The notes under the pieces: generated by a model
Databases searched by the model: none
Told to the model about the DNA's origin: nothing
Seen by the model: the letters and a program-made list of their open reading frames with translations, nothing else
Translations under genes and position numbers: made by a program
Shown here: in pieces, positions 34,201-64,000 of the stretch
How positions within the stretch are numbered: position 1 is the first letter of the stretch
Layout of the letters: the number at the start of each line of letters is the position of its first letter
Assembly: GCA_002104945.1 (NCBI GenBank)
Contig: MCFH01000015.1
Coordinates: forward strand, 806,001 to 870,000
Length of the DNA: 64,000 nucleotides
Reading direction: 5' to 3'
Origin: Piromyces finnis finn
Lineage: Eukaryota > Fungi > Neocallimastigomycota

Positions 34201-34207
34201 AATTTTA

Positions 34208-42808: not shown

Positions 42809-42839
42809 ATCTCGCCCTTTAAGTCGAGCTCCTGCGAGA

Positions 42840-45800
42840 TTATTTCTTTGAAGGAATATCAATTACAAATGGTTGATATCTATGTTTGATCATACCATTG
42901 TTATTCCTTGTATAGACTTGATCTTGACTTTCTTTTCTAGACTTTTTATTTTTTCTATAAAATTCTTGGATCAATTGTACATCTGTAATTTGATCTTCCG
43001 GGATCCAAGTATTTTCGTCAAGATTTTTCCATGTCATCAAGAAAGATTTCTTTCCATGATAATTTCTTTCTTGAATAATCTTATCAGGAATCCTATCAAT
43101 AGTATCAGTAGTTAACTTAACATTTTTTCTTTTATTCATTACTGATCTATTTACAAATTCATTTTCGTTATAAGGTTCCAATAACGAAACATGAAAAACA
43201 GGGTGGCAACGTAAATTGTTTGGTAGTTTTAATTCAAATGCTAAAGGGCTTACCTTCTTGATTATTTCAAAAGGTCCAAGCATTTGATCAGCAAGTTCTC
43301 TTTTGATATTTTTATTTGAAGGATTAATACCTTTTAATAACCAAACTTTTTTACCAACTTCGAAATCTGGGGATTCCATTCTCTTTTGATCAGCATACTT
43401 TTTGTAGGTTTCTTTTGCTTGATCAAGATTTACTTTTAAAAATTTAATGTTTTCATTAATATCCAAAATTCTTTGTTCAGCTCTATTTGGTCTATTCGCT
43501 GAAGGGATTTCAGGGTTAAATTTTGGATTGAACCCATAATTAGCGAAAAACGGAGATTGGTTGATTGATTGCTGTAAAGTATTGTTATAAGCAAATTCAG
43601 CAAAAGGTAACAAGTCAACCCAATTATTCTGTTTTTCGTTAATAAAACAACGGAGATATTGTTCCAATATCCCGTTTACCCTCTCCGTTTGACCATCAGT
43701 TTCAGGATGGTTTGCAGTAGAAAAAGCAAGTTTAATATTTAACAAATTACATAAACGATTCCAAAAGTCTGAGGTAAATTGAGTACCTCGATCAGAAATG
43801 ATGGAATCAGGAAAACCATGTAATTTAAAGATATTGTTAACAAAAACATCAGCTGCTATAGAAGCAGTAGGCAAACATCTTAAAGGAATAAAATGAGCCA
43901 TTTTTGTTAACCTATCAACTATAACCATAATGGTAGTCATGTCTTTGGATTTAGGAAGCTCGACAATAAAATCCATTGACAATTCCGACCAAGCTCTATT
44001 AGGTGTGGAAAGAGGAGAAAGCAAACCATATGGTTTATGTCTTGGAACTTTAGCTTTACAACAAGTTTCGCAAGACTTTATAAACTTTTTAACATCATAA
44101 CTAAACTTTGGCCACCAAAAATTTCTACTAATTAATTCAATAGTTTTATTAACACCAAAGTGACCAGCAGAAATAGAATCATGATGTAATTCTAAGACCC
44201 TAGTTCTTAGTGAAGAAGGAACATAAATTAAATTATCATAAAGTAAAAATCCTTCTTTATCAATTTTAACTTTATTAATATTCCTAATCGGAGGGGACGA
44301 AGAATTTTTATCATTAAGAAATACACAAACTTTATTATATAAATCATCATTTTTTAAGGAACATAGAATAGAATTAATTAAAGAATCATCTTTATTAAAA
44401 GAATTAATTACATTACATGAAATAAAATTACAACTAAAATTACTACATTCAATATTTTCATTAATCCTATCATTATTATAAATATTACAGATATGATCAC
44501 TACGTCTGGATAACAAATCAGGTTTACCAGACTTTTTTCCAGCTCTATAAATTAACTTAAAATCAAATCTTGATAAAAATTCATACCATCTTATCTGTCG
44601 TTGTGAGAGCATCTCAGGCTTTCTTGGAAAGGTTAAATTCTTATGATCAGTATAAATGATGAACTGATGCTTTGCACCTTCCAGATAATGCCTCCATTCT
44701 TCAAGAGCCACTTTGATAGCGAGCAACTCTTTATCATAAATTTGATAGTTCCTTTGAGACTTGGTTAAGCTAGATGAAATAAAAGCAATAGGGTGCAATT
44801 GCCCTTCAAATTCTTGTGAAAGAATTGCACCGACAGCAAAGTTACTAGCGTCAGTCTCAACAATAAAAGGTTTGTTGCTATCAGGGTTCATTAAGATAGG
44901 AGCTGAAGTAAAAGCCTTTTTAAGTGTAACAAATGCATTTTGACACTCAGAAACCCAATTAAAAGGAACATTTTTCCTAGTAAGTTTGTGTAGAGGACTA
45001 GCAATTTTCGCAAAGTCTTTAATAAAAATTCTATAATAATTACATAATCCAATAAAGGATTGAACTTCTTTAACGTTTGTAGGAACAGGCCAGTCGAGGA
45101 TAGCTTTAACTTTATCTCTATCCATTTTCAGACCATCTTTGGATAATACATAACCAAGGAAAGTGGTTTCTGAAACATCAAACTCACACTTCTCTAACTT
45201 AACATATAAATTATTTTCTAATAATTTTTTCAATACTTTTTTAACATGTTCATGATGTTCTTCTAGGCTATTTGAATATATTAGAATATCATCAATATAT
45301 GATATAGCAAAATCATCTAAATAATCACTAAGGACATCATTTATGAAATGTTGAAACGTAGCTGGTGCATTCTTTAAACCAAAAGGCATGACAAGATATT
45401 CAAAATGCCCATATCTTGTTCTAAAGGCAGTTTTGTATTCATCACCCTCTTTGATTCTAACTAAATTATAAGCAGACTTTAAGTCCAACTTAGTAAAGTA
45501 TTTTGCACCTTTCACTCTATCCAATAAGTCACCAATTAACGGAAGAGGATATGAATTTCTAATTGTCATGTCATTAAGTTTCCTATAATCAACGCAAAGT
45601 CTTAATGACCCATCTTTCTTTTTGACAAATAAAACTGGTGCTCCGGCAGGAGATGAAGATTTCCTAATGAAACCTTTTTCTAAATTTTCATTGATATAAT
45701 TTTTTAATTCATCTCTCTCTGCCTCAGTTAAAGGATAAAGAGGACCATAAAACAAGTTAGCATTATCCTTTAATCGGATTTCACAATCGTATTCACGATG

Positions 45801-47651
45801 TGGAGGTAAAATATTACAATTCTTTTCATTAAAAACCTCTTTAAATAATAAATATTGTTTTGGAATTTCAATAGATTTTTTATCTTTATTCAAATTATCA
45901 CTTTCACTTTTACATTTATTAATAATATTACAAAATAAATCATAACAGTTACTAACTGAATTTAATACACGAGAATTATTATTATTACACACGTTTTTTG
46001 AAAATGAGTACTGTTTTGGTCCAGTGACCGAATTATTATCTTTATTTAAATTTTCATCAATACAATTAATGCTATTACATATACATTTAAAATTACAATT
46101 ATTATCATTATTTAAACTATTACTAAATTTAATTTTATTAAAACTATCTAGGTTACTAATGGTTTTGACGGAGGTTCTACGGCCTCTAATACTTAATGTT
46201 TCTTCATCATCACTGGAGTCGCTATAAGAGTATTCATAATGATTGTATGAACCAAGTTCACTATAAGAGGATTGATCATCTTCATCATCTTGAATAACTT
46301 CTTTTCCTTTTCTTGATGATATTTTTTCTTTCTTGGTTTCCTTTGTGCTACTCTTGTTCTTTCTTCTTCCCACATTACAATGTCTGGCACAGTATGTAGA
46401 GTTAAATGCAATTTTGGAAGAATCGTGGTAGTAAACAGGGCAATGTTTATCAATCCAAGGTACACCAAGAATTATATCAACTTCAGGAATTCTAAGTGCA
46501 TATAATTGAATGACTTCGTAATGATTTCTCAAACGAAGGATGCACTTTTCGGATTCCTTTTTCACGGTAGATGTACCTTGCCCTAAACCAGAAACCTTGA
46601 AAGATTCAGCAATATTTGAAAGTTTAATATTATTGATTCGGGCGAACTCGGGGTGGATGAAATTAAGATCGGAACCAGAATCAATAAGTACCTTAGCTTT
46701 GACTTCATCAATATCATTGGTTTTGATATAAAAATCAATAATATTTTTCTTTTCACCTTTATGAATTTCGAATATGTTTGAAGTTCCCTTGGAATTAAGA
46801 TTATCCTTTTTAATTTTCTTGATTGAAGGGCTAGCTTCGTCTTCTGAATAGCATCTCTTGATAATTTTTACATTTTTTGGTTTCTTTTTGTTTGGACAAT
46901 TGAATTGAAAGTGTCCAGACTTTCCACAAGTAAAGCAAACTCCATTCTTCTTAGCCTCAGTGCGATTTATTTTATTTTCGTCATAATTACTTCTATGAGG
47001 AGGGAAGTAATTAACCTTTCTTTGACCTAAACTGATCCTATATAAATCCACATCCATAGGATCATTTTGGTTATAATTTCTTCGGTCTTGATGCGTCATG
47101 TAATATTCACTGATATCATTTCTCTTAGTAAGATTTTCAATACTAAGGACATCAGAATAAAGACGCTCTAATTGAGAGGGATTTGGATTCACTACAGCTA
47201 AATGTTCACGCATTTTCGGATGTAATCCCTTTGTGAACATGTATATTTTAGCTGCTTCATTAAAATTCGAATTTTGGCTAACGCGTTGGAATTCGTTAAT
47301 GTATTCGAACACCTTGCCAAATTTTCTTTGTTTAATGTTGCAAAGTCTTCCATTTGCAACAATCGTATCATTATTCGGATCCCCGAAATTGGTACGAAGA
47401 GCAGCAATAAACCGATCATAGTTTCTTAGAACGGCGTCGTTATTTTGTCTTAAACGAGCGGCCCATTCTAAAGGTCTATTGACAAAGTAAGATATTAAGA
47501 ATCGAACTCTTGCCTCATCATTAACAAATCTATCAGGGTTGGCTTCAATGGCTAGTTCAACCCTGGTCAAGAACCCATCTAGTTCTTGTCTTCTTCCTGA
47601 AAAGGTTGGAGGATCATTAACTATCCTCAAAGACGCCCCTTGACGGTCCAT
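42840..47651 (-). CDS. gag-pol: Gag-Pol polyprotein: Gag, CCHC, protease, RT, RNase H, integrase, chromodomain
   Basis: First ATG at 47651 (the track's 47699 start is TTG). Motifs CFTCGKSGHFQFNC, LIDSGS, YIDD, TDAS/ELLA/TDH, H..H..C..C, MDF/SDRG/QTERVN, GPF, and C-terminal SFLMTWK..NTWIPE. Confidence 0.96.
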   Translation of the reverse strand: MDRQGASLRIVNDPPTFSGRRQELDGFLTRVELAIEANPDRFVNDEARVRFLISYFVNRPLEWAARLRQNNDAVLRNYDRFIAALRTNFGDPNNDTIVANGRLCNIKQRKFGKVFEYINEFQRVSQNSNFNEAAKIYMFTKGLHPKMREHLAVVNPNPSQLERLYSDVLSIENLTKRNDISEYYMTHQDRRNYNQNDPMDVDLYRISLGQRKVNYFPPHRSNYDENKINRTEAKKNGVCFTCGKSGHFQFNCPNKKKPKNVKIIKRCYSEDEASPSIKKIKKDNLNSKGTSNIFEIHKGEKKNIIDFYIKTNDIDEVKAKVLIDSGSDLNFIHPEFARINNIKLSNIAESFKVSGLGQGTSTVKKESEKCILRLRNHYEVIQLYALRIPEVDIILGVPWIDKHCPVYYHDSSKIAFNSTYCARHCNVGRRKNKSSTKETKKEKISSRKGKEVIQDDEDDQSSYSELGSYNHYEYSYSDSSDDEETLSIRGRRTSVKTISNLDSFNKIKFSNSLNNDNNCNFKCICNSINCIDENLNKDNNSVTGPKQYSFSKNVCNNNNSRVLNSVSNCYDLFCNIINKCKSESDNLNKDKKSIEIPKQYLLFKEVFNEKNCNILPPHREYDCEIRLKDNANLFYGPLYPLTEAERDELKNYINENLEKGFIRKSSSPAGAPVLFVKKKDGSLRLCVDYRKLNDMTIRNSYPLPLIGDLLDRVKGAKYFTKLDLKSAYNLVRIKEGDEYKTAFRTRYGHFEYLVMPFGLKNAPATFQHFINDVLSDYLDDFAISYIDDILIYSNSLEEHHEHVKKVLKKLLENNLYVKLEKCEFDVSETTFLGYVLSKDGLKMDRDKVKAILDWPVPTNVKEVQSFIGLCNYYRIFIKDFAKIASPLHKLTRKNVPFNWVSECQNAFVTLKKAFTSAPILMNPDSNKPFIVETDASNFAVGAILSQEFEGQLHPIAFISSSLTKSQRNYQIYDKELLAIKVALEEWRHYLEGAKHQFIIYTDHKNLTFPRKPEMLSQRQIRWYEFLSRFDFKLIYRAGKKSGKPDLLSRRSDHICNIYNNDRINENIECSNFSCNFISCNVINSFNKDDSLINSILCSLKNDDLYNKVCVFLNDKNSSSPPIRNINKVKIDKEGFLLYDNLIYVPSSLRTRVLELHHDSISAGHFGVNKTIELISRNFWWPKFSYDVKKFIKSCETCCKAKVPRHKPYGLLSPLSTPNRAWSELSMDFIVELPKSKDMTTIMVIVDRLTKMAHFIPLRCLPTASIAADVFVNNIFKLHGFPDSIISDRGTQFTSDFWNRLCNLLNIKLAFSTANHPETDGQTERVNGILEQYLRCFINEKQNNWVDLLPFAEFAYNNTLQQSINQSPFFANYGFNPKFNPEIPSANRPNRAEQRILDINENIKFLKVNLDQAKETYKKYADQKRMESPDFEVGKKVWLLKGINPSNKNIKRELADQMLGPFEIIKKVSPLAFELKLPNNLRCHPVFHVSLLEPYNENEFVNRSVMNKRKNVKLTTDTIDRIPDKIIQERNYHGKKSFLMTWKNLDENTWIPEDQITDVQLIQEFYRKNKKSRKESQDQVYTRNNNGMIKHRYQPFVIDIPSKK

Positions 47652-47869
47652 ATTTTCGTTTAAGTGGAGGTTAGATAAGAGTTGGTTGATTTCCTCCAAT
47701 ATGCTTAATATTTTACTTATTTAATTTTTTACAATATTTTAATTAAGATGTCGTCGTAACTCTATCCTATCAAACGGTGTTAGACGAGCTCTTAAAAATA
47801 TAGTAACAAAATTAAATACAGTAACCAAATAGTGTTGGAAGCTTGAATGATACTAAAATAATAATCTAA

Positions 47870-48149
47870 ACGCGGTAGATATTTCCTAAGACACGGTAGA
47901 TCGCCTTTAAAACACAGTAGATATTCCTTTAGACGCGGTAGATATTTCCTAAGACACGGTAGATCGCCTTTAAAACACAGTAGATATTCCTTTAGACGCG
48001 GTAGATATTTCCTAAGACACGGTAGATCGCCTTTAAAACACAGTAGATATTCTTTTAGACGAGGTAGATATTTCCTAAGACACGGTAGATCGCCTTTAAA
48101 ACACAGTAGATATTCTTTTAGACGAGGTAGATATTTCCTAAGACACGGT
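47870..48149. repeat. 63-bp tandem repeat x~4.4, each made of three 21-bp subunits, in the 5' UTR
   Basis: Units start at ~47870, 47933, 47996, 48059 and 48122. Subunits share the core AC(G/A)(C/G)(G/A)GTAGAT. Confidence 0.92.
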
Positions 48150-48224
48150 AAGTAAGAAAAAAAATATTAAATATGTTTTATTAAAAAAAAAAAAATTTTA
48201 TAACGTGTTTTATAAAAAAAAAAG

Positions 48225-48235
48225 GTAATTGTTAT
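48225..48235 (-). promoter_or_regulatory. Self-priming PBS (ATAACAATTAC)
   Basis: Abuts the 5' LTR, has no TGG, and is perfectly complementary to the LTR sequence at 48384-48394. Confidence 0.85.
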
Positions 48236-48962
48236 TGTAAAAGTTTTATAAATGTAAAACAGATTATAAAATTTTTTACAATAAAACAACAACACAAAAT
48301 AAAGAAAAAACAAGAAAATAAATTATATTTAAAAAAATATCTCTTTTATTAATTTTATTTAGTTATTAACTAAATAATAGTCAATAACAATTACATCGTT
48401 TTAATCAAGAAATTTTACATGCATTTATATTTTTCGTAAATTATATTTTAATATACTATTCTATTTAATTATACATATATTCAATATAAAATAAACAAAA
48501 CTAATTTAATACTAATTTAATTAAATAATAAAATAATAAAACTAAACTAAAACTAATTAAATACACTTTTGATTCAATTTGAGTAAACTGCAAATTGAAT
48601 ACAGTCCATGTATTACCTATATATTAATTAAATATTAATAATACTATTTATTATATATTTATAATTAAAAATGCTAATTTAAAACTACGCTAAAGTTATT
48701 AAACTAATTTTAATTAAATAAAAACTTTTTAAGATTTAATTTGAATATTTAAAATATTTAAATTTAATTATCCATTAATTTAAATATTTATCCAAATTTC
48801 ATTTCTAACTTTGATATTTTAAAATTAATATTTATTTAATTATTCCATAAAATTTATACAATAAATTTTATAAACAATTTTTTCATTAAAATATCAAAAT
48901 TATTATTCAATAATTATTAATTAATTATTAAATAATTTAAAGATATACTTTATATCTTTACA
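48236..48962 (-). repeat. 5' LTR (727 bp)
   Basis: Matches 42082-42808. Confidence 0.95.
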
Positions 48963-51003: not shown

Positions 51004-51283
51004 CTTTATATGGATCAATACAACTAGAATGAATAAAACAATTATTATATTATAATGAAATAACACAACAATAAAAATGATTTTTATATTTTATGTATTA
51101 TTGTATATATTCTTTTTATTTATCTTTGATCAATAATGTACTATTTATATGGATCAATACAACTAGAATGAATAAAACAATTATTATATTATAATGAAAT
51201 AACACAACAATAAAAATGATTTTTATATTTTATGTATTATTGTATATATTCTTTTTATTTATCTTTGATCAATAATGTACTAT
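51004..51283. repeat. 139-bp tandem duplication
   Basis: TGGATCAATACAACTAG... starts at 51011 and 51150. Confidence 0.85.
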
Positions 51284-52233
51284 TAATGATTTAAACTCTT
51301 ATAATAGAAATAAATAAGTATAATTCACTAGATTATAATCTGAATATCACTATTAATTCCTACTTAAATCTAATAATAATATTATTTATCTATCTAGTAT
51401 TATCACTTATGCCTATTTTCTTATTATTATTTCTTATTATCTTTTATATCGTTTCTTCTCTTTTAATATTTATTAATTCTCTTTTATTAAATACTCTTTG
51501 TTGTAATTAAGGTTTTTAGTCTTTTTTAATTAATTTTATTTATAATTTTTATTTTAGTTATTGCTATAAGTGTTATTAATTAAATCAATAATTGTTAGCT
51601 TATAAATTTATATATTAAATTTTTATTAAACCTAAAATACTTAAAGTAGAATTATTATTAGTAAAATTAAAGGTTAAATAGGAATTCCTATGCTCTTACA
51701 TTTTTCTGAATCAGTCGTACCATACTGTAAGAAACATAGATAAATTCTATATAATTTACCTATTTTCTTATTAATTAATATTTATTATAATGTTTATTAT
51801 TATTTATTGTTTAATACATTAATTTAACACATTATTTAATACACTATTTAATACATAATTTGATACATTAATTAAATACATTAATTAAATACATTGTTTT
51901 ATTACATTAATTTAGTTGTATCATTTTAACCAATCCATGTATAATGTATTAAATTACTATAAAAGAATAATCTTGATTCTCTTGAGAAATCAAGAGTTAT
52001 TATTATATAAATTTATTAATAAATAAAGTATTAATTATTTTTAAAAAATAATGTTTATTTAACGTGTGTTTTTAAGTGTTAATATTTAATATTTTGTTTA
52101 TTAGTATTTTTATATAAAACTCGACATTAATGTTTTTATTTTCTTTCTCAAATTAGTAATATTTAATTATTATTAATTTGTAGAAGAAGTTATTTATAAT
52201 TTATTTATAAGTAACTTCTTACACATACAACTA

Positions 52234-52826
52234 TGTCACAATAACATATATAAAAATTTAAAAAATTTGGACACATGAAAAAAATTAAAAATTTTTTTAA
52301 AATTTGAAAATTTGAAAATTTGAAAAAATTTCAAATTATAAAATTTCTAATATTCGAAATTATTAAATTTTTTTTAATAATTATTAAAATTTTATTATAA
52401 AAAATTTTTATTTTTAAATTTATTAACTATTTACAATAATTATTAATTATTAATTTATAAAAATTAAATATTTTATAATTAGATAATAATTAATTAAAAT
52501 TAAAAAATGTAATAATTAAAATTGTTCATGTATAAAAAGAACAAAAATTGACAAAAATTACGAAGTTTTAGCATTAGTAATTTTTAACTTAAAGTTAATA
52601 AAATTTATAAACTCCTATAAAACCTAAAACTTTAAAAATTTTAATATTTTTAATAACTTAATATATGCTGATATTAAGTTATTGCTAAAATAAAAATATT
52701 ATTTAATTTTCTTTATATAAATATTATTAGCTTTACGCCTTCAATAGGAAAGCGTATTATATTTGTTAATTAATATAACTAGTGTGCTTACCACACTTTT
52801 CTTTAATAAAAAATCGCTTTTTGACA
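52234..52826 (+). repeat. 5' LTR (593 bp) of the dual-RT element
   Basis: TGTCACA...TTTGACA, lies 81 nt before the gag ATG, followed by a self-priming PBS. Three other copies are in the window. Confidence 0.88.
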
Positions 52827-52837
52827 TTACTAACGCT
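52827..52837 (+). promoter_or_regulatory. Self-priming PBS (TTACTAACGCT)
   Basis: Abuts the LTR. Complementary to LTR 52570-52580 with 1 mismatch in this copy and perfectly in the copies at 10466, 35911 and 41284. Confidence 0.8.
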
Positions 52838-52907: not shown

Positions 52908-55900
52908 ATGGGAAAATCTCCACTTACACCTATTAAAGTGGATACAAAAGAATTTTTTAACCGCCTACAAACTACCAAGAGAGAACGTTCCCCAGGAAAT
53001 ACTCCCGTAAGAAAATCAAAGATGCCTAATCATTCCGGACAAATTAATGCTTCTACGAGTAATCCTACTCAGAAGCCAACTACTAATGAGGATCTCAAGG
53101 CCCTCATTGAGTCTTTAACTGCTACCTTAACTGGGAATATCAATCAGTTAAAGGTTGATATTCAAGCTACCAGAAGGGAAAACGAAAGTCTCAATGATCG
53201 TTTGACTGTTTTGGAAAACTCTACTCAAGTTATTATGGGTAAGATGGCTACTTTAGAAGTCAACGATGCTAGGAAAGACAATCAACTCGCTGATATCAAA
53301 GCTCATATCAGCAAAGCTACTCAAAGAGTTGATGAGTTGTCTACTCCCGTTACTCCTTCTACTACTACCCCTCACGAACCTGACGGTGACGTCATCATGG
53401 GAGATGCTTCGCCTCCAAACGTCGCTGAAAAAATGCTTTCTTACTCAGGAGAAAGTATTCAACTACGCAGATTCATCCGTCGATGCGAACACCACTTCTT
53501 AAGACACATCAAGTTCTATGGAAACAATGAAGCTATGAAAGTAAACTTCATTGAAGATTGTCTTACTGGTGATGCTGCAGATTGGTACGTTGTTGAACAA
53601 GCAGACTTCCAGGAATCTCATCCGAATAGAAAAGTTCTTTACGAAGCTTTGAGTAAGAGATTCCTTAACCCGAAGGATATCAACATCACCAAAATCGACC
53701 TGATGAAGCTCAGACATAGTTGGGGAAAAGCTTCCGAATACTTAGGAAAATTCTCCCAATATGTCAAATTAATTGGATGTTCCGAAGACATTCAATTAAC
53801 CATCATGCTTTTCCAAGTTAGACCTACCGTGAACCACGCCTTTAGTAAGTTAACTTCTGATAGACAAACGTTAGAAGAACTGAAGAATCTTCTAATCAAA
53901 TATGATGCTTCCAAGGATACTTATTACGATGATACTTTGGAAAGACAAGCTAACTACAAGGACAAAGAGCCCTTAATAGCTAATTTATTAGGTATTCATG
54001 GCAGTCTTTATTCCAAAAACCCTAACAAGAATAACAATCGTAATAACAACCAAAGGAACAACAATAACAGCAATCGCCCGTCTAACCAAAAAGGAAAAGG
54101 CTCCAGTAACTTGGATAGCAAGTCTAGTACTAAAAATCCCAATAAAAGTACTAAACCTAATAATGGTACTTCATACTCCAGCTATCTCTGTGAAGTAGAA
54201 GAGCAAGATATCTTAGAGCTACCAAATCCTGATCCGGAGAAGTATCCCATCGTGAAGACTAGTGTAAAAACTTCTAAAGGATCTAGACAGGTTATCACTT
54301 CGTCTCTCTTAGATTCTGGCTCTACTACCAATGTAATCCATATGGATTTAGTGAAGAAACTAGGAATTAAGACCATACCAGCTGATACTGTTGTAAAGGT
54401 CATGGGAGGTAATGTCCTAATGCATTACATCACAGAAGAGTTCAACATTGTAATGAACTTATCTTCTTTAGGAAGAACTCGAGAAGAAGTTCGTCAATAC
54501 AAACTTCGATGCCACGTAGCTGATCAGCTTCCTTCTTCGATTCTCCTAGGTTCTAAGTTCATGAAAACCAACTTCTTCTGTATCTTTACACAACCTGACC
54601 ATTCCTTTACAGTTAAAATTGGTCCTGTTCCTTTCTCCAACCATAATGGATCTGAGATTAAATCTCCTAACTTTAGGAATGATTTGAAGAAATCTACACC
54701 TCTTCATGAATTACGCGAAGTCCTCCAAAAGAGACAGTTCGTCTTAGACGAACAATGGGACAAAGAACATTTGAACGATCGAGGAAGAATCGTGATCAAG
54801 AAACAATCAAGCAAGAAACCCAATAATAACCATGTCCACAACACAGAAACGATAACCCTATCCAACGAAGAAAAACTGAAAATCGAACAAAGGCTTCTTA
54901 AACAAAAACAAAACAATCAAAGTTTTATAATCTCAACTGACCATAAAGAAGGACTCGACGAATACATTATCAAGGAAATACAAAACCTCCCTCAAGAATT
55001 ACAAGAATTCAAGCAAGTTTTCGGACCACCACCAAAGGGCAAGATATTTAATAGGAAAAACGAAAATTTAAATTCATACTTACCTTATGATAAGGAAAAA
55101 GTTAAGAGGCTACCCATGATGCCTCACATCAAATTAGACAAAAACCAAGAAGACGCTCTTGAACAAGAATTTCATGAACTTGAACAGAACGGAAAAATCG
55201 AGAGAACTCGATCCAGTTCGGCTTGCAACGTCTTTAATGCACCTAAGAAAGATGGTACATTCAGAACTGTGTTTAATTACGTTATGGTTAATAATTGCCT
55301 ACACCATAACAACTACCCAATACCTAAAATAATCGAACTTGTACACAGAGCTGCCCAGTATAAGTTCCATATTTTACTAGATTTAAGAAATGCCTATAAC
55401 CAAATCTATCTCGAGCCCAAATATCGTTTCCTTACAAGCTTTAGATTTAAAAACCAAACCTATCAATGGAAAGTTCTTCCCTTTGGACTCTCCACTGCCC
55501 CATCCATTTTCCAATCCATTCTCAACCTCTTATTAAAAATATACTTGAATAAAGGTATTGATATCTACCTAGATGATATACATATTTATGCCCAAGATAA
55601 GCAAGAATGCCTCAGACTTTGTGCTTACACTTTAAAGAAGTTCAAAGAAAATAATTTCTTTTGTAAACTTGAAAAATGCTTATTTTTCCCAGAAGAATTC
55701 GAATATTTAGGGTACAAAATTGGATATGAAAAAATACGTCCTATTTCTAATAAAACTTTAGACATTAAAGAATGCAAAACACAAAAGGAATATCAGCAAC
55801 TATATGGCTTTCTTAATTATTTCAAAGACTACGTAAATAACTTTACCGAAAGAACAAAATATATCTCTATGGGACTATCAAATAAAACCACTACTTGGAC

Positions 55901-57923
55901 TAAAGAAATGAATGACGAACTAAATTATTTTAAGAAATTAATTCCTAACCTTCCAAATTTAGCACCGTTTAAACCTAACCACGATATCTTTATCCTAACC
56001 GACGCATCGGAAATCGGAATTGGCGCCGCAATTTTTCAAGCGGGGGCCCCCAATGTACATATTCAAAATTACATTTTAAGTAACGTATACAAGAATAATA
56101 TTAATCGTGAAATCATCGAAAACTTATTTGGTCATAAAAATTGGACATTAAACGGACATTCTGAAGTAAATGGACGTGAAAATAAGAAAATCGATAAAGC
56201 CAAGAATCGTGAAGATATCAATCCACCAATTAAATTGAATGAAGCAATGAATACATTTGAAATAAAAAACAATAGTTTATCCGAATTAAAAAAGTATTTA
56301 AAACCCATAGGCTTTTTCTCCAGAAAATTGAATTCTACAGAAAGAAAATATTCAACATTCGACAGAGAATTATTAGCTCTCTCGGACACCTTACAACACT
56401 ACCGGTTACTTCTCCAACAAGGACAAAAAATATACTGTGCGACGGACCATAAGAATTTGGTAATCTACATAAATTCCGGATCCAAAGTCGAAACTAATCG
56501 TAAGTTAAGATTATTTGAAAATATTTGCAATTACAATATAATACCTTATTATATCGAAGGAAAAGACAACAAGATTGCAGATCTACTCTCAAGATTTATT
56601 AAAATGGAAAACGAAACCGAAAATACTAGCAACAGAAGAAACCCACAGCAGGTCAACAATATTGAAGAAACAAATTCTTTGGATTTCTTAGTAAATGCCA
56701 TTGAACTCAAGGACTTAGAATCTACCAACAAAGAAGAAGATAACGAGGAACCAGACTTAAAAGTCTTTAAGACTACCATAAGTTCGCTAATGGAAAATAA
56801 TAAACAAAAGGAACTAAAAAATTATCTTATCAATTGGTACAAGAACCAGGATATGTTATTCAAATCATTGAAGGAACAAATAGTAAACCTACTAGAAGAA
56901 AACACTTTCTTCGAAAAACAATATAAAAAACAAGTTAATCTCAGATGTCAAGACCTAAAAGATGTATTGGATAAAAGAGAACATTTTAGTTCAGAAATAA
57001 AAAAGGTGAAAGATGAATTACAACTTCTACAAACTGGCAACACCCAAGGAGAAACTAAAAGAAAATTTGATAGACTTAATCAAAAAATAAACGATTTAAG
57101 GTATGACCTCAATCCAAAGGCTGAAAGAATAGAACTCACTAAGAAAGTAAACCATTCGGAAAAACAGATAACTGCCCAATGGAAAGAGATAGAAAACCTC
57201 AAGAAAATAATAGAAAAAATGGATAAAAGGATAACTGCCCTAATCATTGACAACGAAGAAGACTCAAATCTGGATAAATCAACTTCCATTCCAACAGAAA
57301 CAGTCTTCATAGTCGATGATCAGAATCCTGAACTAGTAGAATCTATCAACGGTATACCTTTGGAATATGAAGATTTATATGAAGCCTTCAATGAAGAACG
57401 AGCCGATGAACTTCCTGAACATCGTGTATATGATTGTTCTATTGATTTGAAACCTAATGCTTCATTATTTTATGGGCCAATTTATCCAACTACTCCTACT
57501 GAACGTCAATTTATTAAGGAGTATATTGAAGAAAACTTGAATAAAGGATTCATTAGAAAATCCCGATCTCCTGCTGGACATCCAGTTCTACTCCAAGATA
57601 AGAAGGATGGTAGTCTCAGATTTTGCGTTGACTATCGCAAGCTCAACGACCAAACTATCAAGAATGCCTATCCGCTACCTTTAATCCTATCAGTCTTTGA
57701 ATCAATGAAAGGTGCTAACTATTTCACTAAGTTAGACCTCAAGTCAGCTTATAATTTAATTAGGATTAAAGAAGGTGACGAATACAAGACTGCATTTAGG
57801 ACGGCATTTGGTCACTTTGAGTACTTAGTCATGCCTTTTGGACTAACTAATGCTCCTGCAGTTTTCCAAGCTTTCATTAATGATATCTTTAGTGATCAAA
57901 TTAATAAGTACGTTCAAGTGTAA
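52908..57923 (+). CDS. gag-pol: Polyprotein part 1: Gag, protease, RT1, RNase H1, coiled-coil domain, N-terminal half of RT2
   Basis: Gag (YSGESIQLRRFIRRCEHHF), LLDSGS, RT1 (LLDLRNAYNQI, LPFGLSTAP, YLDD at 55566), RH1 (TDAS, RELLA, TDH, ADLLSR), then a second RT ([37 protein letters not shown]). Confidence 0.92.
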   Translation: MGKSPLTPIKVDTKEFFNRLQTTKRERSPGNTPVRKSKMPNHSGQINASTSNPTQKPTTNEDLKALIESLTATLTGNINQLKVDIQATRRENESLNDRLTVLENSTQVIMGKMATLEVNDARKDNQLADIKAHISKATQRVDELSTPVTPSTTTPHEPDGDVIMGDASPPNVAEKMLSYSGESIQLRRFIRRCEHHFLRHIKFYGNNEAMKVNFIEDCLTGDAADWYVVEQADFQESHPNRKVLYEALSKRFLNPKDINITKIDLMKLRHSWGKASEYLGKFSQYVKLIGCSEDIQLTIMLFQVRPTVNHAFSKLTSDRQTLEELKNLLIKYDASKDTYYDDTLERQANYKDKEPLIANLLGIHGSLYSKNPNKNNNRNNNQRNNNNSNRPSNQKGKGSSNLDSKSSTKNPNKSTKPNNGTSYSSYLCEVEEQDILELPNPDPEKYPIVKTSVKTSKGSRQVITSSLLDSGSTTNVIHMDLVKKLGIKTIPADTVVKVMGGNVLMHYITEEFNIVMNLSSLGRTREEVRQYKLRCHVADQLPSSILLGSKFMKTNFFCIFTQPDHSFTVKIGPVPFSNHNGSEIKSPNFRNDLKKSTPLHELREVLQKRQFVLDEQWDKEHLNDRGRIVIKKQSSKKPNNNHVHNTETITLSNEEKLKIEQRLLKQKQNNQSFIISTDHKEGLDEYIIKEIQNLPQELQEFKQVFGPPPKGKIFNRKNENLNSYLPYDKEKVKRLPMMPHIKLDKNQEDALEQEFHELEQNGKIERTRSSSACNVFNAPKKDGTFRTVFNYVMVNNCLHHNNYPIPKIIELVHRAAQYKFHILLDLRNAYNQIYLEPKYRFLTSFRFKNQTYQWKVLPFGLSTAPSIFQSILNLLLKIYLNKGIDIYLDDIHIYAQDKQECLRLCAYTLKKFKENNFFCKLEKCLFFPEEFEYLGYKIGYEKIRPISNKTLDIKECKTQKEYQQLYGFLNYFKDYVNNFTERTKYISMGLSNKTTTWTKEMNDELNYFKKLIPNLPNLAPFKPNHDIFILTDASEIGIGAAIFQAGAPNVHIQNYILSNVYKNNINREIIENLFGHKNWTLNGHSEVNGRENKKIDKAKNREDINPPIKLNEAMNTFEIKNNSLSELKKYLKPIGFFSRKLNSTERKYSTFDRELLALSDTLQHYRLLLQQGQKIYCATDHKNLVIYINSGSKVETNRKLRLFENICNYNIIPYYIEGKDNKIADLLSRFIKMENETENTSNRRNPQQVNNIEETNSLDFLVNAIELKDLESTNKEEDNEEPDLKVFKTTISSLMENNKQKELKNYLINWYKNQDMLFKSLKEQIVNLLEENTFFEKQYKKQVNLRCQDLKDVLDKREHFSSEIKKVKDELQLLQTGNTQGETKRKFDRLNQKINDLRYDLNPKAERIELTKKVNHSEKQITAQWKEIENLKKIIEKMDKRITALIIDNEEDSNLDKSTSIPTETVFIVDDQNPELVESINGIPLEYEDLYEAFNEERADELPEHRVYDCSIDLKPNASLFYGPIYPTTPTERQFIKEYIEENLNKGFIRKSRSPAGHPVLLQDKKDGSLRFCVDYRKLNDQTIKNAYPLPLILSVFESMKGANYFTKLDLKSAYNLIRIKEGDEYKTAFRTAFGHFEYLVMPFGLTNAPAVFQAFINDIFSDQINKYVQV

Positions 57924-60317
57924 TTGGATGATATCATTATCTACTCCAAGACCCTTGAAGAACATGTTCAACATGTTAGAAATGTTCTTCAATTAATCAT
58001 TGAAAACAACTTAGTTGCGAAACTCAAAAAATGTGAGTTTCACAAAGCTGAAATCGAATTTTTGGGTCACGTAATCAGTAAGGAGGGAATCAAAACTGAT
58101 CCTCACAAAATTGAAGCAGTTAAGAACTGGCCTATCCCCACTACTGTGAAAGAAGTTCAGTCTTTCTTAGGGTTATGCAATTACTACCGTCGCTTTATCT
58201 CTAACTTTTCTAAAATTGCAAAACCATTATACAACTTAACTAAGAAAGGCGTCACTTTCATATGGACAGACGAGTGTAATAGAGCATTTAATCAACTTAA
58301 AGAATTTCTTACTTCAGCTCCAGTTTTACTTTGTCCTGATCACGATAAACCATTCATAGTTGAATGTGACGCAAGTGACTTTGCTATCGGGGGAGTACTT
58401 TCACAAAAAGGTGATGATGGAGACCTGCATCCAGTTTATTACTTTTCTAAAACCCTTCATGATGCAGAACTTAATTACTCTATCACCGAAAAGGAACTCT
58501 TAGCAATTCGTCAAGCTTTTATCGAATGGCGTCACTTACTTCAAGGTGCAAAATATCCTATTACCGTTTATTCAGACCATCGAAACTTGCTTTTTGCTAC
58601 CAAACCGCAACTTCTATCCCAAAGACAAGCTCGTTGGCAAGAATACTTTGCTACTTTTGATTTCAAGATTATCTATCGACCAGAAAAGAAAAATGGTAAA
58701 GCTGATGCTCTCTCTCGTAGATCCGACCATATGCTCACAGTTGGTAAGGATATAAGTGAATCATCCTTACTTAAACCAACTCAATTAGAAGGATTCAACG
58801 AAGATGAATGCTACTTCTCTATGGAAACTAGCTTCATTGACGACATTAAGCAGTGCTACCTTCAAGATGAAACCGCTTGTCAGATTCTTAAGGATCTTGA
58901 AGTTCCAAATAGTGATCATCCTTGGATTCTTCAAGATGGCCTTTTAATAAGAACCAAACATCCGGAGCAAGTATATGTTCCAAGTCAACTAAGACTCTTA
59001 GTTATTAAGCTCAACCATGATGCACCCACTGCCGGTCACTTGGGAGTCGATAAGACTTATGACATTCTTAAACGTAATTTCTATTGGGTTAATATGCGTC
59101 AAGATGTCGAGTCTTATATTCGAAGCTGTAGTGTATGCAAGGCAATGAAAACCGATCACCATGCTCCTTATGGTAATATGATCCGTGTCCCTCTTCCGGA
59201 ACTTCCATGGCAACATCTACAAATGGACTTTATCACGGACTTACCATCAAGACCTTGTAACTCTACCTTACCATTCGACTCTACCAATCCGAACCACTAT
59301 CAAGGTACCATAATGGTTACTACTTGCTACTTAACTAAGATGATACACTTAGTTGGGTTCAAACATTTATCCACTGCTAAGGAAACTGCTACTGCTTTTC
59401 TTAACCATATTTTCAAACTGCACGGATTCCCCTTATCTATTGTTACAGACCGTGGTACTCAGTTCGAAAGTCGTCTTTGGTTCCACTTGATGGAATTCTT
59501 TAATATCGATCACCACTCTGCTACTACTGGCCATCACCGCACTGTTGGACAAGTAGAACGTAACAACGACTACGTCGAAACTTATCTTCGTTGCTACTTA
59601 GCTCAATTTGATGATCTCAGTTGGATGGATCATTTGTACTTAGCTGAATTTTGCTACAACAATTCCATCCATGCTTCCACCAAGCAACCACCATTTCTCT
59701 CCGTCTATAATTATCAAGTTCACGCAAACCCACAAATTGCAGACCTTGTTTCTTCTTTAGGACTTCATCCCCTCATCGATAGCTTCTCCCATAACTTAGC
59801 TGACCTTAAGCATACTCTCGAAGTCAGTCGTACCCGTTATCTCGATGAAAAGGATAAGCACCTTTATCACAACTTTAAGCGCTTCAAGGTCCACGATCTT
59901 GTTTGGCTTCGCAAACCCGCTAATTATCATCCTCCATTAGCGTTCAAGCTCCAAACCCGCAAGTATGGTCCATACAAGGTCACTGGTGTCGATGAATCTA
60001 AGCTCAACTACCGCCTTGATTTATCTACCTCACCTTTCCCTCGTGTCTACCCCGTATTCCACATCAGTGAACTCGAACCATATCATCCCACTCCTCACCA
60101 TCTATTGCTCAACCATCCCAACTCCAATGAAATCACCAAGATCCTTAGTTCTCGTAAATCGGGTCATTTTTACGAGTACTTAGTCACTTTTACTGACTTA
60201 TCTCAACGTTGGATCAATGCTGACACCATTGATAAGGATGACTACTACAGCACCCTTTTAGCTGATTACCAACGTCGCGCTTACCAACAATTCACCAATT
60301 CCGTCCCAGATTCTTAA
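57924..60317 (+). CDS. pol: Polyprotein part 2 (same frame, after TAA): rest of RT2, RNase H2, integrase, chromodomain
   Basis: LDD, CDASD/KELLA/SDH/ADALSR, HDAPTAGH..CSVC, MDF/TDRG/QVERNN, GPYKV, EITKILSSR..YEYLVTF..RW. Confidence 0.9.
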   Translation: MDDIIIYSKTLEEHVQHVRNVLQLIIENNLVAKLKKCEFHKAEIEFLGHVISKEGIKTDPHKIEAVKNWPIPTTVKEVQSFLGLCNYYRRFISNFSKIAKPLYNLTKKGVTFIWTDECNRAFNQLKEFLTSAPVLLCPDHDKPFIVECDASDFAIGGVLSQKGDDGDLHPVYYFSKTLHDAELNYSITEKELLAIRQAFIEWRHLLQGAKYPITVYSDHRNLLFATKPQLLSQRQARWQEYFATFDFKIIYRPEKKNGKADALSRRSDHMLTVGKDISESSLLKPTQLEGFNEDECYFSMETSFIDDIKQCYLQDETACQILKDLEVPNSDHPWILQDGLLIRTKHPEQVYVPSQLRLLVIKLNHDAPTAGHLGVDKTYDILKRNFYWVNMRQDVESYIRSCSVCKAMKTDHHAPYGNMIRVPLPELPWQHLQMDFITDLPSRPCNSTLPFDSTNPNHYQGTIMVTTCYLTKMIHLVGFKHLSTAKETATAFLNHIFKLHGFPLSIVTDRGTQFESRLWFHLMEFFNIDHHSATTGHHRTVGQVERNNDYVETYLRCYLAQFDDLSWMDHLYLAEFCYNNSIHASTKQPPFLSVYNYQVHANPQIADLVSSLGLHPLIDSFSHNLADLKHTLEVSRTRYLDEKDKHLYHNFKRFKVHDLVWLRKPANYHPPLAFKLQTRKYGPYKVTGVDESKLNYRLDLSTSPFPRVYPVFHISELEPYHPTPHHLLLNHPNSNEITKILSSRKSGHFYEYLVTFTDLSQRWINADTIDKDDYYSTLLADYQRRAYQQFTNSVPDS

Positions 60318-60742
60318 TCTGGACCCCACTTATTAGTATCCCACCTACTAGTGTCTACCACCCTTACTCCTTCACTACCCACCTATCGCCACTACCCCAC
60401 CTACTACCCACAACTCCGCTACCCACTAGTCGCCACCACTACAACTACCAACCACTATTCCGCTACCCAACCACCCTCTTTCGCCTTTGCCCTCAACCCT
60501 CAAATTCCGCAACCTTTTCCGCATCCCAAAATCCGTATCCCCTCGAGTCATATCATTTCCCTAACCTTCACGTGTAGTCTCCATTTCTGAAGAATCCACG
60601 TGATACCCTCACAACTTTTCTTTGAACACTTTTACACCTCACTTTTTCAACACTTAGAAAAATTTTGAGAATTTTCAAAAAATGGAAATTCTCAATTTTT
60701 GAAAAAAAATCTAAGGTAGCACGTAACGTATTACGAAGAGCA

Positions 60743-62290: not shown

Positions 62291-62747
62291 AAATTGCCTG
62301 TTCGTTTTAGTAAAAACTAACGGGGGCCTTTTCTTCAATGGTAACTAGATAATATGTAGCTATGGCTATATACTATTTCGGGTATTGGCCTACTTATCTT
62401 AGGAAATCTAAAATACTTAAACCAATGTATATGTAGTATTGACGTTAAAGAGCCTACTTTAAGGAATTTTCACGTAAGTAAAACTCGTTTGTGATTTATG
62501 CGTTTTATATAATAATTTTATTTAATATGTTTTATTATAAGTTTATTTATAAGATCAAAGTTATTTAAAAGTTTGTTGTTTTATTAATTCTTTATCCTCT
62601 GTTGCTATATTGTCGAGGAAGACTATCTTTTTCTAGTGATTAATAATAACTAACAAATACTTTTAAAAGTTATAAAGTTTTATAAATAAATGAATTTTTT
62701 CGAATTAATACGTTTGAGTTTAAAATTTTCGTTACAAATTTTATATT

Positions 62748-62851
62748 ACGAATTTAAATTACGAATTTTAACTACGAATTAAAACTACGAATTTTAACTA
62801 CGAATTAAAACTACGAATTTTAATCACGAATTTTAACCACGAATTTTAAAT
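62748..62851. repeat. 13-bp tandem repeat x8 (ACGAATTTTAACT consensus)
   Basis: Units start at 62748, 62761, 62774, 62787, 62800, 62813, 62826 and 62839. Confidence 0.9.
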
Positions 62852-63013
62852 TAGAAAAAACTAAAGTTTTAAAATAATACATTTAGATGATATTTATACA
62901 TGATTATTAAATTTAGCTATAATATTATTAATAAACTATTACTAATAGAATTTTTAAAGTTATATTAAATATAAATAATTTTAACTAATTAGATTCATTT
63001 TTTGTGTTTAAAG

Positions 63014-64000
63014 TTAGTCAAATGTTTCTTGGTTCTTTTTCATTGGTTCATTTGTTAAATCGATTTCTATTTGAAAGTTCGAAAGTTTTCTTTTCTTAAG
63101 TTCATTACTAATTACGGCTTCGGAAGCGGGGAAGATTTCCTTTAATTCGTTATCAATTATCAAAGCATTGATTCTTTTACTAATACTTTCGATTTTATTT
63201 CTAAGTTCTTCTGTTTCCTTCCATTGGGCAGTTAATTGTTTTTCCGTTTTATTAACCTTTCTAGTAAGTTCGATGCGTTCGGCCTTTGGGTTTAGATCAT
63301 ATCTAAGGTCGTTGATTTTTTGATTTAATTTGTTGAATTTTCTTTTAACTTCTACTTGAGTGTTTCCTGTTTGAAGAAGTTGAATTTCGTCTTTTACCTT
63401 TTTAATTTCTTGATTAAACTGTTCCTTTCTGTCCAAGACTTCTTTTAAGTCTTCGCATCTTAAATTAATCTGCTTTTTATATTGTTTTTCATAATAAGTG
63501 TTTTCTTCTAATAGGTTAATAATTTGTTCTTTCAAGCTTTTGAATAGTTTATCCTGATTTCGATACCATTTGTATAGGTAATCCTTTAATTCTTCTTGTT
63601 TATTGCTTTCGATTAATGAATTGATTGTAACTTTAAAGACTTTGAAGTCGGTGTCTTCTTTCTTTTCATTATTGTTTGATGATTCCTTATCTTTTAATTC
63701 AATTGTGTTGATTATAAAATCTAGTGAGTTCATTTCCTCTATGTTGTTTATCTGTTGTGGATTAGCTATAGTATTATTGTTTACTTCATTACTTTGTTCC
63801 ATTTTGATAAATCTTGATAATAGGTCCGCTATTTTGTTATCTTTTCCTTCTATGTAGCAAGGTATAACATTAAAATTGCAAATATTCTCGAATAGTCGTA
63901 GCTTTCTATTTGTTTCGACTTTGGAACCAGAGTTGATATAGATTACTAGGTTCTTGTGGTCCGTGGCGCAATAGATTTTTTGTCCCTGTTGAAGTAATAA
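63014..64000 (-). CDS. 3' end of a second RT1-type ORF: RNase H C-terminus plus coiled-coil domain, then stop (runs off window)
   Basis: Open from 64000: LLLQQGQKIYCATDHKNL...ADLLSRFIKME, 3 aa differences from RH1 in 66 codons. The coiled coil is homologous to 56600-57255, and the ORF ends ...QETFD* with no RT2 or integrase. Confidence 0.88.
   Translation of the reverse strand, partial: LLLQQGQKIYCATDHKNLVIYINSGSKVETNRKLRLFENICNFNVIPCYIEGKDNKIADLLSRFIKMEQSNEVNNNTIANPQQINNIEEMNSLDFIINTIELKDKESSNNNEKKEDTDFKVFKVTINSLIESNKQEELKDYLYKWYRNQDKLFKSLKEQIINLLEENTYYEKQYKKQINLRCEDLKEVLDRKEQFNQEIKKVKDEIQLLQTGNTQVEVKRKFNKLNQKINDLRYDLNPKAERIELTRKVNKTEKQLTAQWKETEELRNKIESISKRINALIIDNELKEIFPASEAVISNELKKRKLSNFQIEIDLTNEPMKKNQETFD

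What the first reader, a model, noticed from the sequence alone, without database searches (positions are those of the whole stretch)
52908..60317. LTR retroelement with two complete, very different RT-RNase H modules in one reading frame
Seen: between the protease and a normal chromovirus RT-RH-IN lies an in-frame ~850-aa block (~54700-57260). It holds a divergent RT with all three catalytic Asp, an RNase H with all four acidic residues, and a coiled-coil domain. The block is more A-rich than the flanking gag and RT2-IN, suggesting foreign origin. A relative at 63014-64000 differs by many synonymous but few amino-acid changes, so the module has been under purifying selection. Known: extra RNase H domains occur in plant Tat and some oomycete elements, but I know of no lineage with a second RT-RH. 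Inference: a chromovirus captured the enzyme module of an integrase-less retroelement, giving either a stable dual-RT lineage or a carrier/passenger pair; a one-off in-frame recombinant is the alternative.
Basis: partly seen in the sequence, partly recalled or inferred. Interest (0 to 1): 0.9.

Follow-up and report, generated by a model that had tools for sequence, protein, structure and literature searches.

The report
Chimeric fungal retrotransposon, two reverse transcriptases
One copy of a Ty3/gypsy-type jumping gene in an anaerobic gut fungus has swallowed, in frame, the reverse transcriptase-RNase H-coiled-coil part of a second, integrase-less retroelement family; the chimera is real, but all the evidence available points to a young, probably single and already broken recombinant rather than a new dual-enzyme lineage.

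Summary
Frame 52908-60317 reads gag-PR, then an 850-codon foreign block (54708-57257: linker, RT1, RNase H1, helical domain), then RT2-RH2-IN with a weak chromo-like tail. One thing was missed: a TAA at 57921-57923 sits where relatives have the Tyr of RT2's Y-L-D-D.

- **Host:** gag-PR and RT2-IN belong to one chromovirus-like lineage of anaerobic gut fungi. Its four nearest relative families (57-58% pol identity) have no block. Their gag-PR/pol frameshift overlap lies in the same PR-RT interval that holds the block.
- **Donor:** the block comes from a separate Ty3-like family seen in Piromyces finnis, Piromyces sp. E2 and metagenomes. That family has gag-like, PR, RT, RH, a conserved helical domain, a 43-aa tail and a stop, but no integrase. 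All three donor 3' ends seen are standalone, including the window's own second copy.
- **Selection:** synonymous sites are saturated and pN is 0.09-0.26, so purifying selection on the donor family is confirmed.
- **Age:** the block keeps the donor's A-rich third positions, with a sharp switch at the junctions, which suggests a recent fusion.
- **Other copies:** no second copy with either junction was found, but the source genome could not be searched.

Most likely this is a young recombinant made by double template switching or illegitimate recombination.

The parts
52234..52827 (+). 5' LTR of the host chromovirus-like element
   Evidence: Three more copies lie in the window (10375-10826, 35650-36237, 41023-41610, all minus strand, 87-97% identity). 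LTR plus gag is also conserved in Piromyces sp. E2 locus L013 at 68% nt identity. No 3' partner lies within the window.
52908..54227 (+). Host gag, with an N-terminal helical part and a Ty3-capsid-like core
   Evidence: Sub-threshold Ty3_capsid match, E = 8e-5. About 29% identity to the gag of RT2-clade relatives. A 92%-identical fragment lies at 10269-10379 next to another LTR copy.
54228..54707 (+). Host aspartic protease (D-S-G Asp at 54312) and the start of the PR-RT linker
   Evidence: Pfam Asp_protease_2 at aa 466-551. 30-34% identity to the PR of relatives.
54708..55187 (+). Donor block, part 1: post-protease linker of the RT1 family (5' junction at about 54708)
   Evidence: Homology to the L001 polyprotein begins here. 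There is none upstream. 74-81% identity to L001 and L012.
55188..55877 (+). Donor block, part 2: RT1 (motif A Asp at 55380; Y-L-D-D Asps at 55572-55577)
   Evidence: Pfam RVT_1 full length, E = 7e-46 for both RTs together. 86-89% identity to P. finnis copies, about 30% to chromovirus RTs. Best solved structure is Ty3 RT, E = 1e-57.
55878..56612 (+). Donor block, part 3: RNase H1 with a family-specific insertion of about 80 aa (D 56001, E 56367, D 56445, D 56580)
   Evidence: Pfam RT_RNaseH and RT_RNaseH_2, both split. Alignment A3 shows the insertion conserved in L001 and L012 and absent from chromoviruses.
56613..57257 (+). Donor block, part 4: conserved helical (coiled-coil-like) domain; 3' junction after ..I-I-D-N-E at 57257
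   Evidence: Alignment A2 has long invariant runs. AF2 predicts long helices at low confidence. No Pfam or PDB relative. Similarity to copy 2 ends exactly here.
57258..57920 (+). Host PR-RT linker remnant and the N-terminal half of RT2 (motif A Asp at 57735)
   Evidence: 63-72% identity to relatives from about aa 1472. 68% identity to the neighbouring chromovirus.
57921..57923 (+). In-frame TAA where relatives have the Tyr codon of RT2's Y-L-D-D
   Evidence: and alignment A3.
57924..60317 (+). Host RT2 C-terminal half, RNase H2, integrase (zinc finger; D 59226, D 59448, E 59556), SH3, and a weak chromo-like tail
   Evidence: Pfam hits. 57-58% identity to P0272-P0275. Chromo/Tudor-knot signal is only sub-threshold.
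60318..60715 (+). C-rich 3' untranslated remnant of the host element, cut off by an unrelated repeat that starts at about 60716
63014..64000 (-). Second, standalone member of the donor family: end of RNase H, helical domain, 43-aa tail, own stop. Its 5' part lies beyond the window end.
62789..63082 (-). LTR-like 3' region of that second copy, including the 13-nt tandem repeat at 62714-62869
   Evidence: 70-85% identity to the 3' repeat of L012 and to the 3' flank of L001. Repeat found. The outer boundary is approximate.

Best explanation
The region holds a real chimeric LTR retrotransposon from an anaerobic gut fungus (Piromyces or a close relative).

**Host and donor.** The host is a Ty3/gypsy, chromovirus-like element: LTR, gag, PR, RT2, RH2, IN and a chromo-like tail. 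Its relatives translate pol through a frameshift that lies between PR and RT. In this copy that PR-RT interval holds 2,550 bp (850 codons) copied from the internal part of a different retroelement family. In its standalone form that family encodes gag-like, PR, linker, RT1, RH1 (with an insertion of about 80 aa), a conserved helical domain, a 43-aa tail and a stop. It has no integrase.

**Breakpoints.** The donor piece runs from just after the donor's PR to a point that, in copy L012, lies about 60 nt before the donor's 3' repeat. It is joined in frame on both sides.

**Mechanism (inferred).** During minus-strand synthesis on a host RNA, the polymerase switched to a co-packaged donor RNA and back again. 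This is the mechanism that makes LTR-mediated retrocopies. An equivalent illegitimate recombination at the DNA level is also possible.

**Age and state (inferred).** The event is recent on the scale of synonymous change. The product is probably a single or very low-copy dead end. As it stands it would translate gag-PR-RT1-RH1-helical domain plus half of RT2 and then stop, giving no integrase, so it could move only with help in trans.
For: **Shown**
- Both junctions are mapped to within a few codons.
- Donor identity: 78% amino-acid identity to the standalone P. finnis copies L001 and L012 and to window copy 2, which all end in tail plus stop.
- Donor copies elsewhere keep their own gag-like and PR parts upstream of the same linker.
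- No integrase or recombinase domain is found in the donor polyprotein.
- Host unity: four relative families have gag-PR followed directly by RT-RH-IN with no block. The window's 27% gag-PR and 58% pol identity fit the trend among those relatives.
- Three of these relatives (L014, L020, L021) have overlapping gag-PR and pol frames in the same PR-RT interval.
- Third-position composition of the block equals the standalone donor family (A 0.40 against 0.41-0.45). It differs from both flanks (A 0.22-0.30, T 0.38-0.42). Change points fall at 54708 and 57423.
- No direct repeat flanks the block, so it is not an ordinary nested insertion. There are no LTRs at the junctions.
- RT2 has a TAA in its active-site motif.

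**Literature**
- Internal foreign copies flanked by discontinuous LTR-element sequence, made by template switches and often in frame, are documented (PMC5131818). Template switching also creates complex LTR elements (PMC1950507).
Against: - The source genome could not be searched, so the lack of other copies is weak evidence.
- Both junctions are in frame and sit at domain boundaries. The chance is roughly 1 in 9 for frame alone, or 1 in 18 with orientation. This also fits selection for a working fusion.
- The block shows no excess amino-acid change relative to standalone copies: pN to outgroups is 0.25-0.26 against 0.23-0.26. All its catalytic residues are intact.
- Only one stop occurs in 2,469 codons.
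- The donor subfamily closest to the block was not sampled. All pairs are saturated at synonymous sites, so the time of capture cannot be dated directly.
- Microsimilarity at the junctions, the hallmark of template switching, could not be tested because the unbroken host parent is unknown.
Confidence: 0.62

Rival explanations
1. A transposing dual-RT lineage. The fusion is functional: the integrase-less RT1-RH1-helical module rides in a chromovirus that supplies LTRs and integrase (a carrier and passenger, or division of labour between two polymerases). The window holds one recently inactivated member.
For: - Both junctions are in frame at domain boundaries, the block is intact with all catalytic residues, and there is one stop in 2,469 codons.
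- The host LTR family is multi-copy in this window, so the family has been active.
- A P. finnis donor derivative (L012) carries only the linker-RT1-RH1-helical ORF between 99%-identical repeats. The module can therefore persist in a mobile unit without its own gag-PR.
Against: - No second copy with either junction was found.
- Three of three donor 3' ends are standalone.
- Four of four nearest host relatives lack the block.
- Composition has not converged across the junctions, as it should under shared replication over time.
- RT2 is broken in its active site, and the 3' LTR is not seen.
Confidence: 0.2
2. DNA-level history. A complete donor element inserted into the PR-RT linker of an integrated chromovirus. 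Two later deletions removed its 5' part (repeat, gag-like, PR) and its 3' tail and repeat, leaving an in-frame remnant by chance.
For: - The window is a dense nest of retroelements with many truncated and nested copies.
- Donor-family copies lie next to chromovirus fragments in L012 and in the window.
Against: - It needs three events, with two independent deletions both restoring frame.
- No remnant of donor repeats or of a target duplication is found at the junctions.
- The rest of the element shows almost no decay.
Confidence: 0.1
3. Assembly artefact. Two unrelated repeats were joined by the assembler.
For: The region is highly repetitive, and read support could not be examined.
Against: - Misjoins arise at shared sequence, yet host and donor share none at either junction.
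- Two artefactual joins in the same orientation and both in frame are unlikely.
- The block sits inside an otherwise collinear element.
Confidence: 0.05

Closest known systems
Ty3/gypsy chromovirus-like LTR retrotransposons of anaerobic gut fungi (relatives L014, L015-18, L020, L021-22; P0272-P0275, including an Orpinomyces model)
   Same: Same gag, PR, RT, RNase H, integrase (zinc finger, D-D-E, SH3) and weak chromo-like tail. Pol identity is 57-58%.
   Different: The relatives go straight from PR to RT, with a frameshift overlap between them. The window copy has 850 foreign codons in that interval and a single frame.
LTR-mediated retroposition chimeras and template-switch recombinants (PMC5131818; PMC1950507; PMC5668417)
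   Same: A foreign RNA-derived segment lies inside a discontinuous LTR retrotransposon. It has no target duplication of its own and can be in frame with the carrier.
   Different: The passenger is the pol of another retroelement rather than a cellular mRNA or a sister copy, so the product has two RT-RNase H modules. Microsimilarity at the fusion points could not be tested.
Dual RNase H in retroviruses and in Tat and other Ty3/gypsy lineages (PMC4408406)
   Same: An extra enzymatic domain within pol.
   Different: In those lineages only RNase H is doubled, and the state is fixed across whole lineages. Here a whole RT-RNase H-helical module is added and only one copy is known.
Integrase-less reverse-transcribing elements (Caulimoviridae / endogenous caulimovirids, PMC10377300), as a comparison for the donor family
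   Same: PR-RT-RNase H with no integrase.
   Different: The donor's RT-RH is closer to Ty3 (E = 1e-57) than to the caulimovirus polymerase chain 8r0s (E = 4e-29). One copy has 403-bp direct terminal repeats and a 13-14-bp target duplication. The host is a fungus. No movement protein or zinc-knuckle capsid was detected.

Membership tests
Ty3/gypsy (Metaviridae) LTR retrotransposon: host part | Domain order PR, RT, RNase H, integrase in pol | tested here: met
   Pfam hits in that order once the block is set aside. Collinear with relatives.
Ty3/gypsy (Metaviridae) LTR retrotransposon: host part | Integrase with zinc finger and D-D-E core | tested here: met
   Integrase_H2C2 E = 7e-22. rve is weak (E = 5e-4, below the cut-off). 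D 59226, D 59448 and E 59556 align with the neighbouring chromovirus.
Ty3/gypsy (Metaviridae) LTR retrotransposon: host part | Two long terminal repeats with a target-site duplication | tested here: inconclusive
   The 5' LTR at 52234-52827 is identified from four copies in the window. No 3' LTR lies before the window end, because the element is interrupted at about 60716.
Chromovirus (chromodomain-bearing Ty3/gypsy) | Chromodomain at the integrase C-terminus | tested here: inconclusive
   Only Tudor-knot at E = 0.12 in the window. Chromo scores E = 0.02-0.05 in relatives, all below Pfam cut-offs. The tail aligns with the Pfam-positive chromodomain of the neighbouring element.
   None was found in the window, 22 fetched loci, the protein collections, JGI metagenomes, IMG/VR or prokaryotic genomes. 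The source genome itself is not searchable, so this is a weak negative.
   A TAA at 57921-57923 in RT2's Y-L-D-D position ends translation before RH2 and IN.
LTR-mediated retroposition / template-switch chimera | An internal foreign segment flanked by discontinuous carrier sequence, without its own terminal repeats or target duplication | tested here: met
LTR-mediated retroposition / template-switch chimera | Microsimilarity between donor and carrier at the fusion points | not testable with these tools
   It needs the unbroken parent of the host element. The closest relative has only 58% pol identity.
DIRS / Ngaro (tyrosine-recombinase retroelements): considered for the donor family | Tyrosine recombinase ORF; inverted or split terminal repeats | tested here: not met
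   No recombinase domain in the L001 polyprotein or neighbouring ORFs. L012 has direct repeats. The donor has an aspartic protease motif, which DIRS elements lack (from my own knowledge).
Caulimoviridae-like pararetrovirus: considered for the donor family | RT closest to caulimovirus RT; no terminal direct repeats | tested here: not met
   Ty3 RT scores E = 1e-57 against E = 4e-29 for chain 8r0s. L012 has 403-bp direct repeats and a target duplication.

The most novel reading that the evidence does not exclude
The chimera may be the founder or a member of a young, transposition-competent lineage. In it an integrase-less Ty3-like polymerase module (RT1-RH1-helical domain) has made a chromovirus its vehicle. 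One polyprotein would then carry two different RT-RNase H enzymes, and the ancestral gag-PR/pol frameshift would be replaced by a single frame. The evidence also leaves open that the donor family itself is a previously undescribed kind of LTR-like retroelement that inserts without an integrase. That reading rests on one copy with a 13-14-bp target duplication and non-TG/CA ends.
Probability: 0.18. Interest if true: 0.8.

Novelty: new variant of a known kind. Interest (0 to 1): 0.45.

Why it matters
If it is a one-off, it is a clean natural example of inter-family recombination between retroelements. Both parents are identified and both breakpoints mapped, which shows how whole enzymatic modules can be shuffled into a polyprotein in frame. 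This is the kind of event thought to lie behind the extra RNase H of retroviruses and Tat elements.

If other copies exist, it would be the first LTR element I know of with two different RT-RNase H modules. It would allow a direct test of whether an integrase-less element can survive as a passenger.

The donor family deserves a description in its own right, whichever reading holds. It is old (synonymous sites are saturated between members) and strongly constrained. It is present in at least two Piromyces genomes and in metagenome and other public assemblies. It has a conserved C-terminal helical domain of unknown function and no integrase.

Tried and rejected
**Searches that found nothing useful**
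- LTR search around the element found no pair. Only the 5' LTR could be recognised, through other copies.
- Exact look-up of the window's ORFs in the protein collection found none.
- A protein search with the RT1 block against long proteins gave only 25-31% Ty3/gypsy hits. The best 'multi-RT' hits (P0001, P0123, P0124) are head-to-tail concatenations of whole polyproteins, so they are gene-model fusions and not analogues.
- A gag-PR-linker protein search gave only one Piromyces sp. E2 gag model, at a contig end.
- Scans of JGI metagenomes (gag-PR; donor helical-domain alignment), IMG/VR (gag-PR; helical domain; junction pattern) and prokaryotic genomes (junction pattern) found no relative of the host gag and no second junction.
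- Rfam and tRNA scans of the window were empty.
- Literature searches found no description of dual-RT LTR elements or of Piromyces retroelements.

**Analyses that failed**
- The structure model of the helical domain had mean pLDDT 51 and that of the 400-aa neighbouring ORF had 34. Both were too poor for fold searches.
- dN/dS ratios could not be computed because pS exceeds the saturation limit in every pair. pN and pS are reported instead.

**Ideas rejected**
- The 35650-41610 'LTR pair' is not a second family member: its interior is 16% GC and non-coding.
- There is no target-duplication-like repeat around the block.

Full report
**What is in the sequence**

The window is a nest of retroelements in DNA whose non-coding parts are 10-16% G+C. 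From 52908 one frame stays open for 1,671 codons and meets a TAA at 57921-57923. It then continues in the same frame for 797 more codons to 60317.

Pfam reads the following, in order:
- an aspartic protease at aa 466-551;
- a full reverse transcriptase at aa 779-938 (RT1);
- a split RNase H at about aa 1000-1230 (RH1);
- the first half of a second RT;
- after the stop, the second half of that RT, an RNase H, an integrase zinc finger, a weak rve core and the SH3 of Tf2-type integrases.

RT1 and RH1 keep every catalytic residue when aligned with chromovirus relatives. RT2 does not.

**Where it comes from**

Close relatives of the middle block come from Piromyces finnis (assembly GCA_002104945.1; named), Piromyces sp. 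E2 and metagenome or run assemblies. A neighbouring repeat is 98% identical in DNA to a P. finnis locus. The window is therefore from P. finnis or a near relative, an anaerobic gut fungus.

**The block and its donor family**

- *Borders.* Homology to the donor begins at 54708 and ends at 57257, after ..I-I-D-N-E.
- *Standalone form.* In P. finnis locus L001 the same module is the 3' part of one long polyprotein. That protein has a helical N-terminal region, a gag-like region and a D-S-G protease, followed by the linker, RT1 and RH1 with the same insertion of about 80 aa. It ends with a conserved helical domain, a 43-aa tail and a stop. More distant members in metagenome contigs keep the gag-like and protease parts upstream of the same linker.
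- *No integrase.* Pfam finds no integrase or recombinase in it.
- *3' ends.* All three donor 3' ends available (L001, L012 and the window's own second copy at 63014-64000, minus strand) end in tail plus stop. None runs into RT2.
- *Type.* RT1-RH1 is Ty3-like: Ty3 RT scores E = 1e-57, the caulimovirus-type chain 8r0s E = 4e-29 and foamy-virus RT about 1e-21.
- *Helical domain.* It has long invariant runs across four copies and no relative in Pfam or the PDB. It is predicted, at low confidence, to be long helices.
- *Selection.* Between any two members synonymous sites are saturated (pS 0.73-0.87) while pN is 0.09-0.26.

**The host**

The closest relatives of RT2-IN have 57-58% identity. They fall into four families: L014; L015-18; L020; L021-22. 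All show gag, PR, RT, RH, IN and a weak chromo-like tail with no block.

The window's gag and PR are 27-34% identical to theirs. Among the relatives themselves, 65% pol identity goes with 33-36% gag-PR identity, and 84-87% with 58-62%. The window's 58% and 27% lie on the same trend. So gag-PR and RT2-IN are two halves of one lineage, split by the block.

In L014, L020 and L021 the gag-PR and pol frames differ and overlap by 47-90 nt, the usual sign of a programmed frameshift. That site lies in the interval that the block now occupies.

The host's 5' LTR is 52234-52827. Three further copies of it, and a 92%-identical gag fragment, lie elsewhere in the window. LTR plus gag also recur in Piromyces sp. 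E2. No 3' LTR is present, because an unrelated repeat begins at about 60716 and the second donor copy follows it to the window end.

**Lineage or one-off**

For a recent, probably single event:
1. The block's third-codon composition (A 0.40, T 0.27) is that of standalone donors (A 0.41-0.45). It differs from both flanks (A 0.22-0.30, T 0.38-0.42).
2. A blind two-change-point search returns 54708 and 57423. Shared replication over a time comparable to synonymous turnover should have blurred this boundary.
3. Every donor 3' end and every host relative examined lacks the fusion.
4. RT2 is stopped in its active-site motif, so no integrase would be made.
5. No second copy of either junction was found anywhere that could be searched.

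For a selected fusion:
1. Both junctions are in frame and at domain boundaries.
2. The block is intact and shows no excess amino-acid change.
3. The whole 2,469-codon frame has one stop.
4. The P. finnis copy L012 shows that the linker-RT1-RH1-helical ORF alone can sit between 99%-identical repeats with a target duplication.

The negative searches are weak, because the source genome is not in any collection I could query. I put about 0.6 on a young recombinant that is single or nearly so, and about 0.2 on a real dual-RT lineage. The rest is split between a multi-step DNA-level history and an assembly artefact.

**Mechanism**

The block has no terminal repeats and no flanking duplication, so it is not an ordinary nested insertion. 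Its layout is an internal piece of a foreign RNA flanked by discontinuous carrier sequence in the same orientation. That matches LTR-mediated retroposition, where two template switches between co-packaged RNAs embed a passenger in an LTR element, often in frame (PMC5131818; see also PMC1950507 and PMC5668417).

This step is inferred. The test would be microsimilarity at the fusion points, and it needs the unbroken host parent, which I could not find.

As it stands the copy would give a 1,671-aa product ending in half of RT2. It could move only with integrase supplied in trans.

**Comparison with known systems**

The host passes the tests for a Ty3/gypsy element. Its second LTR is unseen and its chromodomain is only sub-threshold.

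Extra RNase H domains are fixed features of retroviruses and several Ty3/gypsy lineages (PMC4408406). I found no report of a second whole RT-RNase H module. Database proteins with several RTs turned out to be concatenated neighbouring elements.

The finding is therefore a new variant of a known kind of event, inter-element recombination. It is not yet a new kind of element.

Noticed in passing
L012:6840-11386 (P. finnis); also L001:4400-10935: The donor (RT1) family has no integrase. In L012 it sits between 403-bp direct repeats that are 99% identical, with ends ATCGAAC...AAAGATA rather than TG...CA. It is flanked by a 13-14-bp target duplication inside another repeat. This copy carries only the linker-RT1-RH1-helical ORF (787 aa). 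The long duplication hints at insertion without an integrase, but this is a single case.
   Followed up: partly
window 60716-~62300 (ORF 60665/60743-61867, +); copies at window 555-1010 (-) and L001:19752-20630: A repeat that is 98% identical between loci encodes a protein of about 375-400 aa with an arginine-rich N-terminus. It has no Pfam, PHROG or PDB relative, and the single-sequence structure model was too poor to use. It cuts off the 3' end of the chimeric element. Its nature is unknown.
   Followed up: partly
L014:4614-4705; L020:9024-9070; L021:2463-2509: Relatives of the host element have gag-PR and pol in different frames that overlap by 47-90 nt, probably a programmed frameshift. 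The window element has lost this arrangement and reads as one frame.
   Followed up: partly
window 42080-48962 (-): A full-length chromovirus with a 1,619-aa polyprotein (Ty3 capsid, zinc knuckle, PR, RT, RH, IN, Pfam-positive chromodomain) and 729-bp LTRs that are 100% identical. It is a very young insertion.
   Followed up: partly
window 26929-34970 (-): Another LTR element with 767-bp LTRs at 98.8% identity. It contains an RT-RH ORF (28850-30184) and a 536-aa ORF with no Pfam hit (30756-32366).
   Followed up: no
window 35650-36237 and 41023-41610 (-); 10375-10826 (-): Extra copies of the host element's LTR. The first two are 96.8% identical to each other and 5.4 kb apart, but the DNA between them is 16% G+C and non-coding, so they are not the ends of a coding element. 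The third abuts a 37-aa gag fragment (10269-10379).
   Followed up: yes
window 62714-62869; 51005-51287; 48000-48188: Tandem repeats: a 13-nt unit (about 12 copies) inside the LTR-like tail of the second donor copy; a 139-bp tandem duplication; and a 21/63-nt array.
   Followed up: no
window 56406-57257 versus 63146-64000: The proportion of synonymous differences between the two donor copies (0.84) exceeds the 0.75 expected at saturation, although their third-position base composition is nearly the same. This is unexplained. It may reflect small-sample noise or different codon preferences within amino-acid classes.
   Followed up: no
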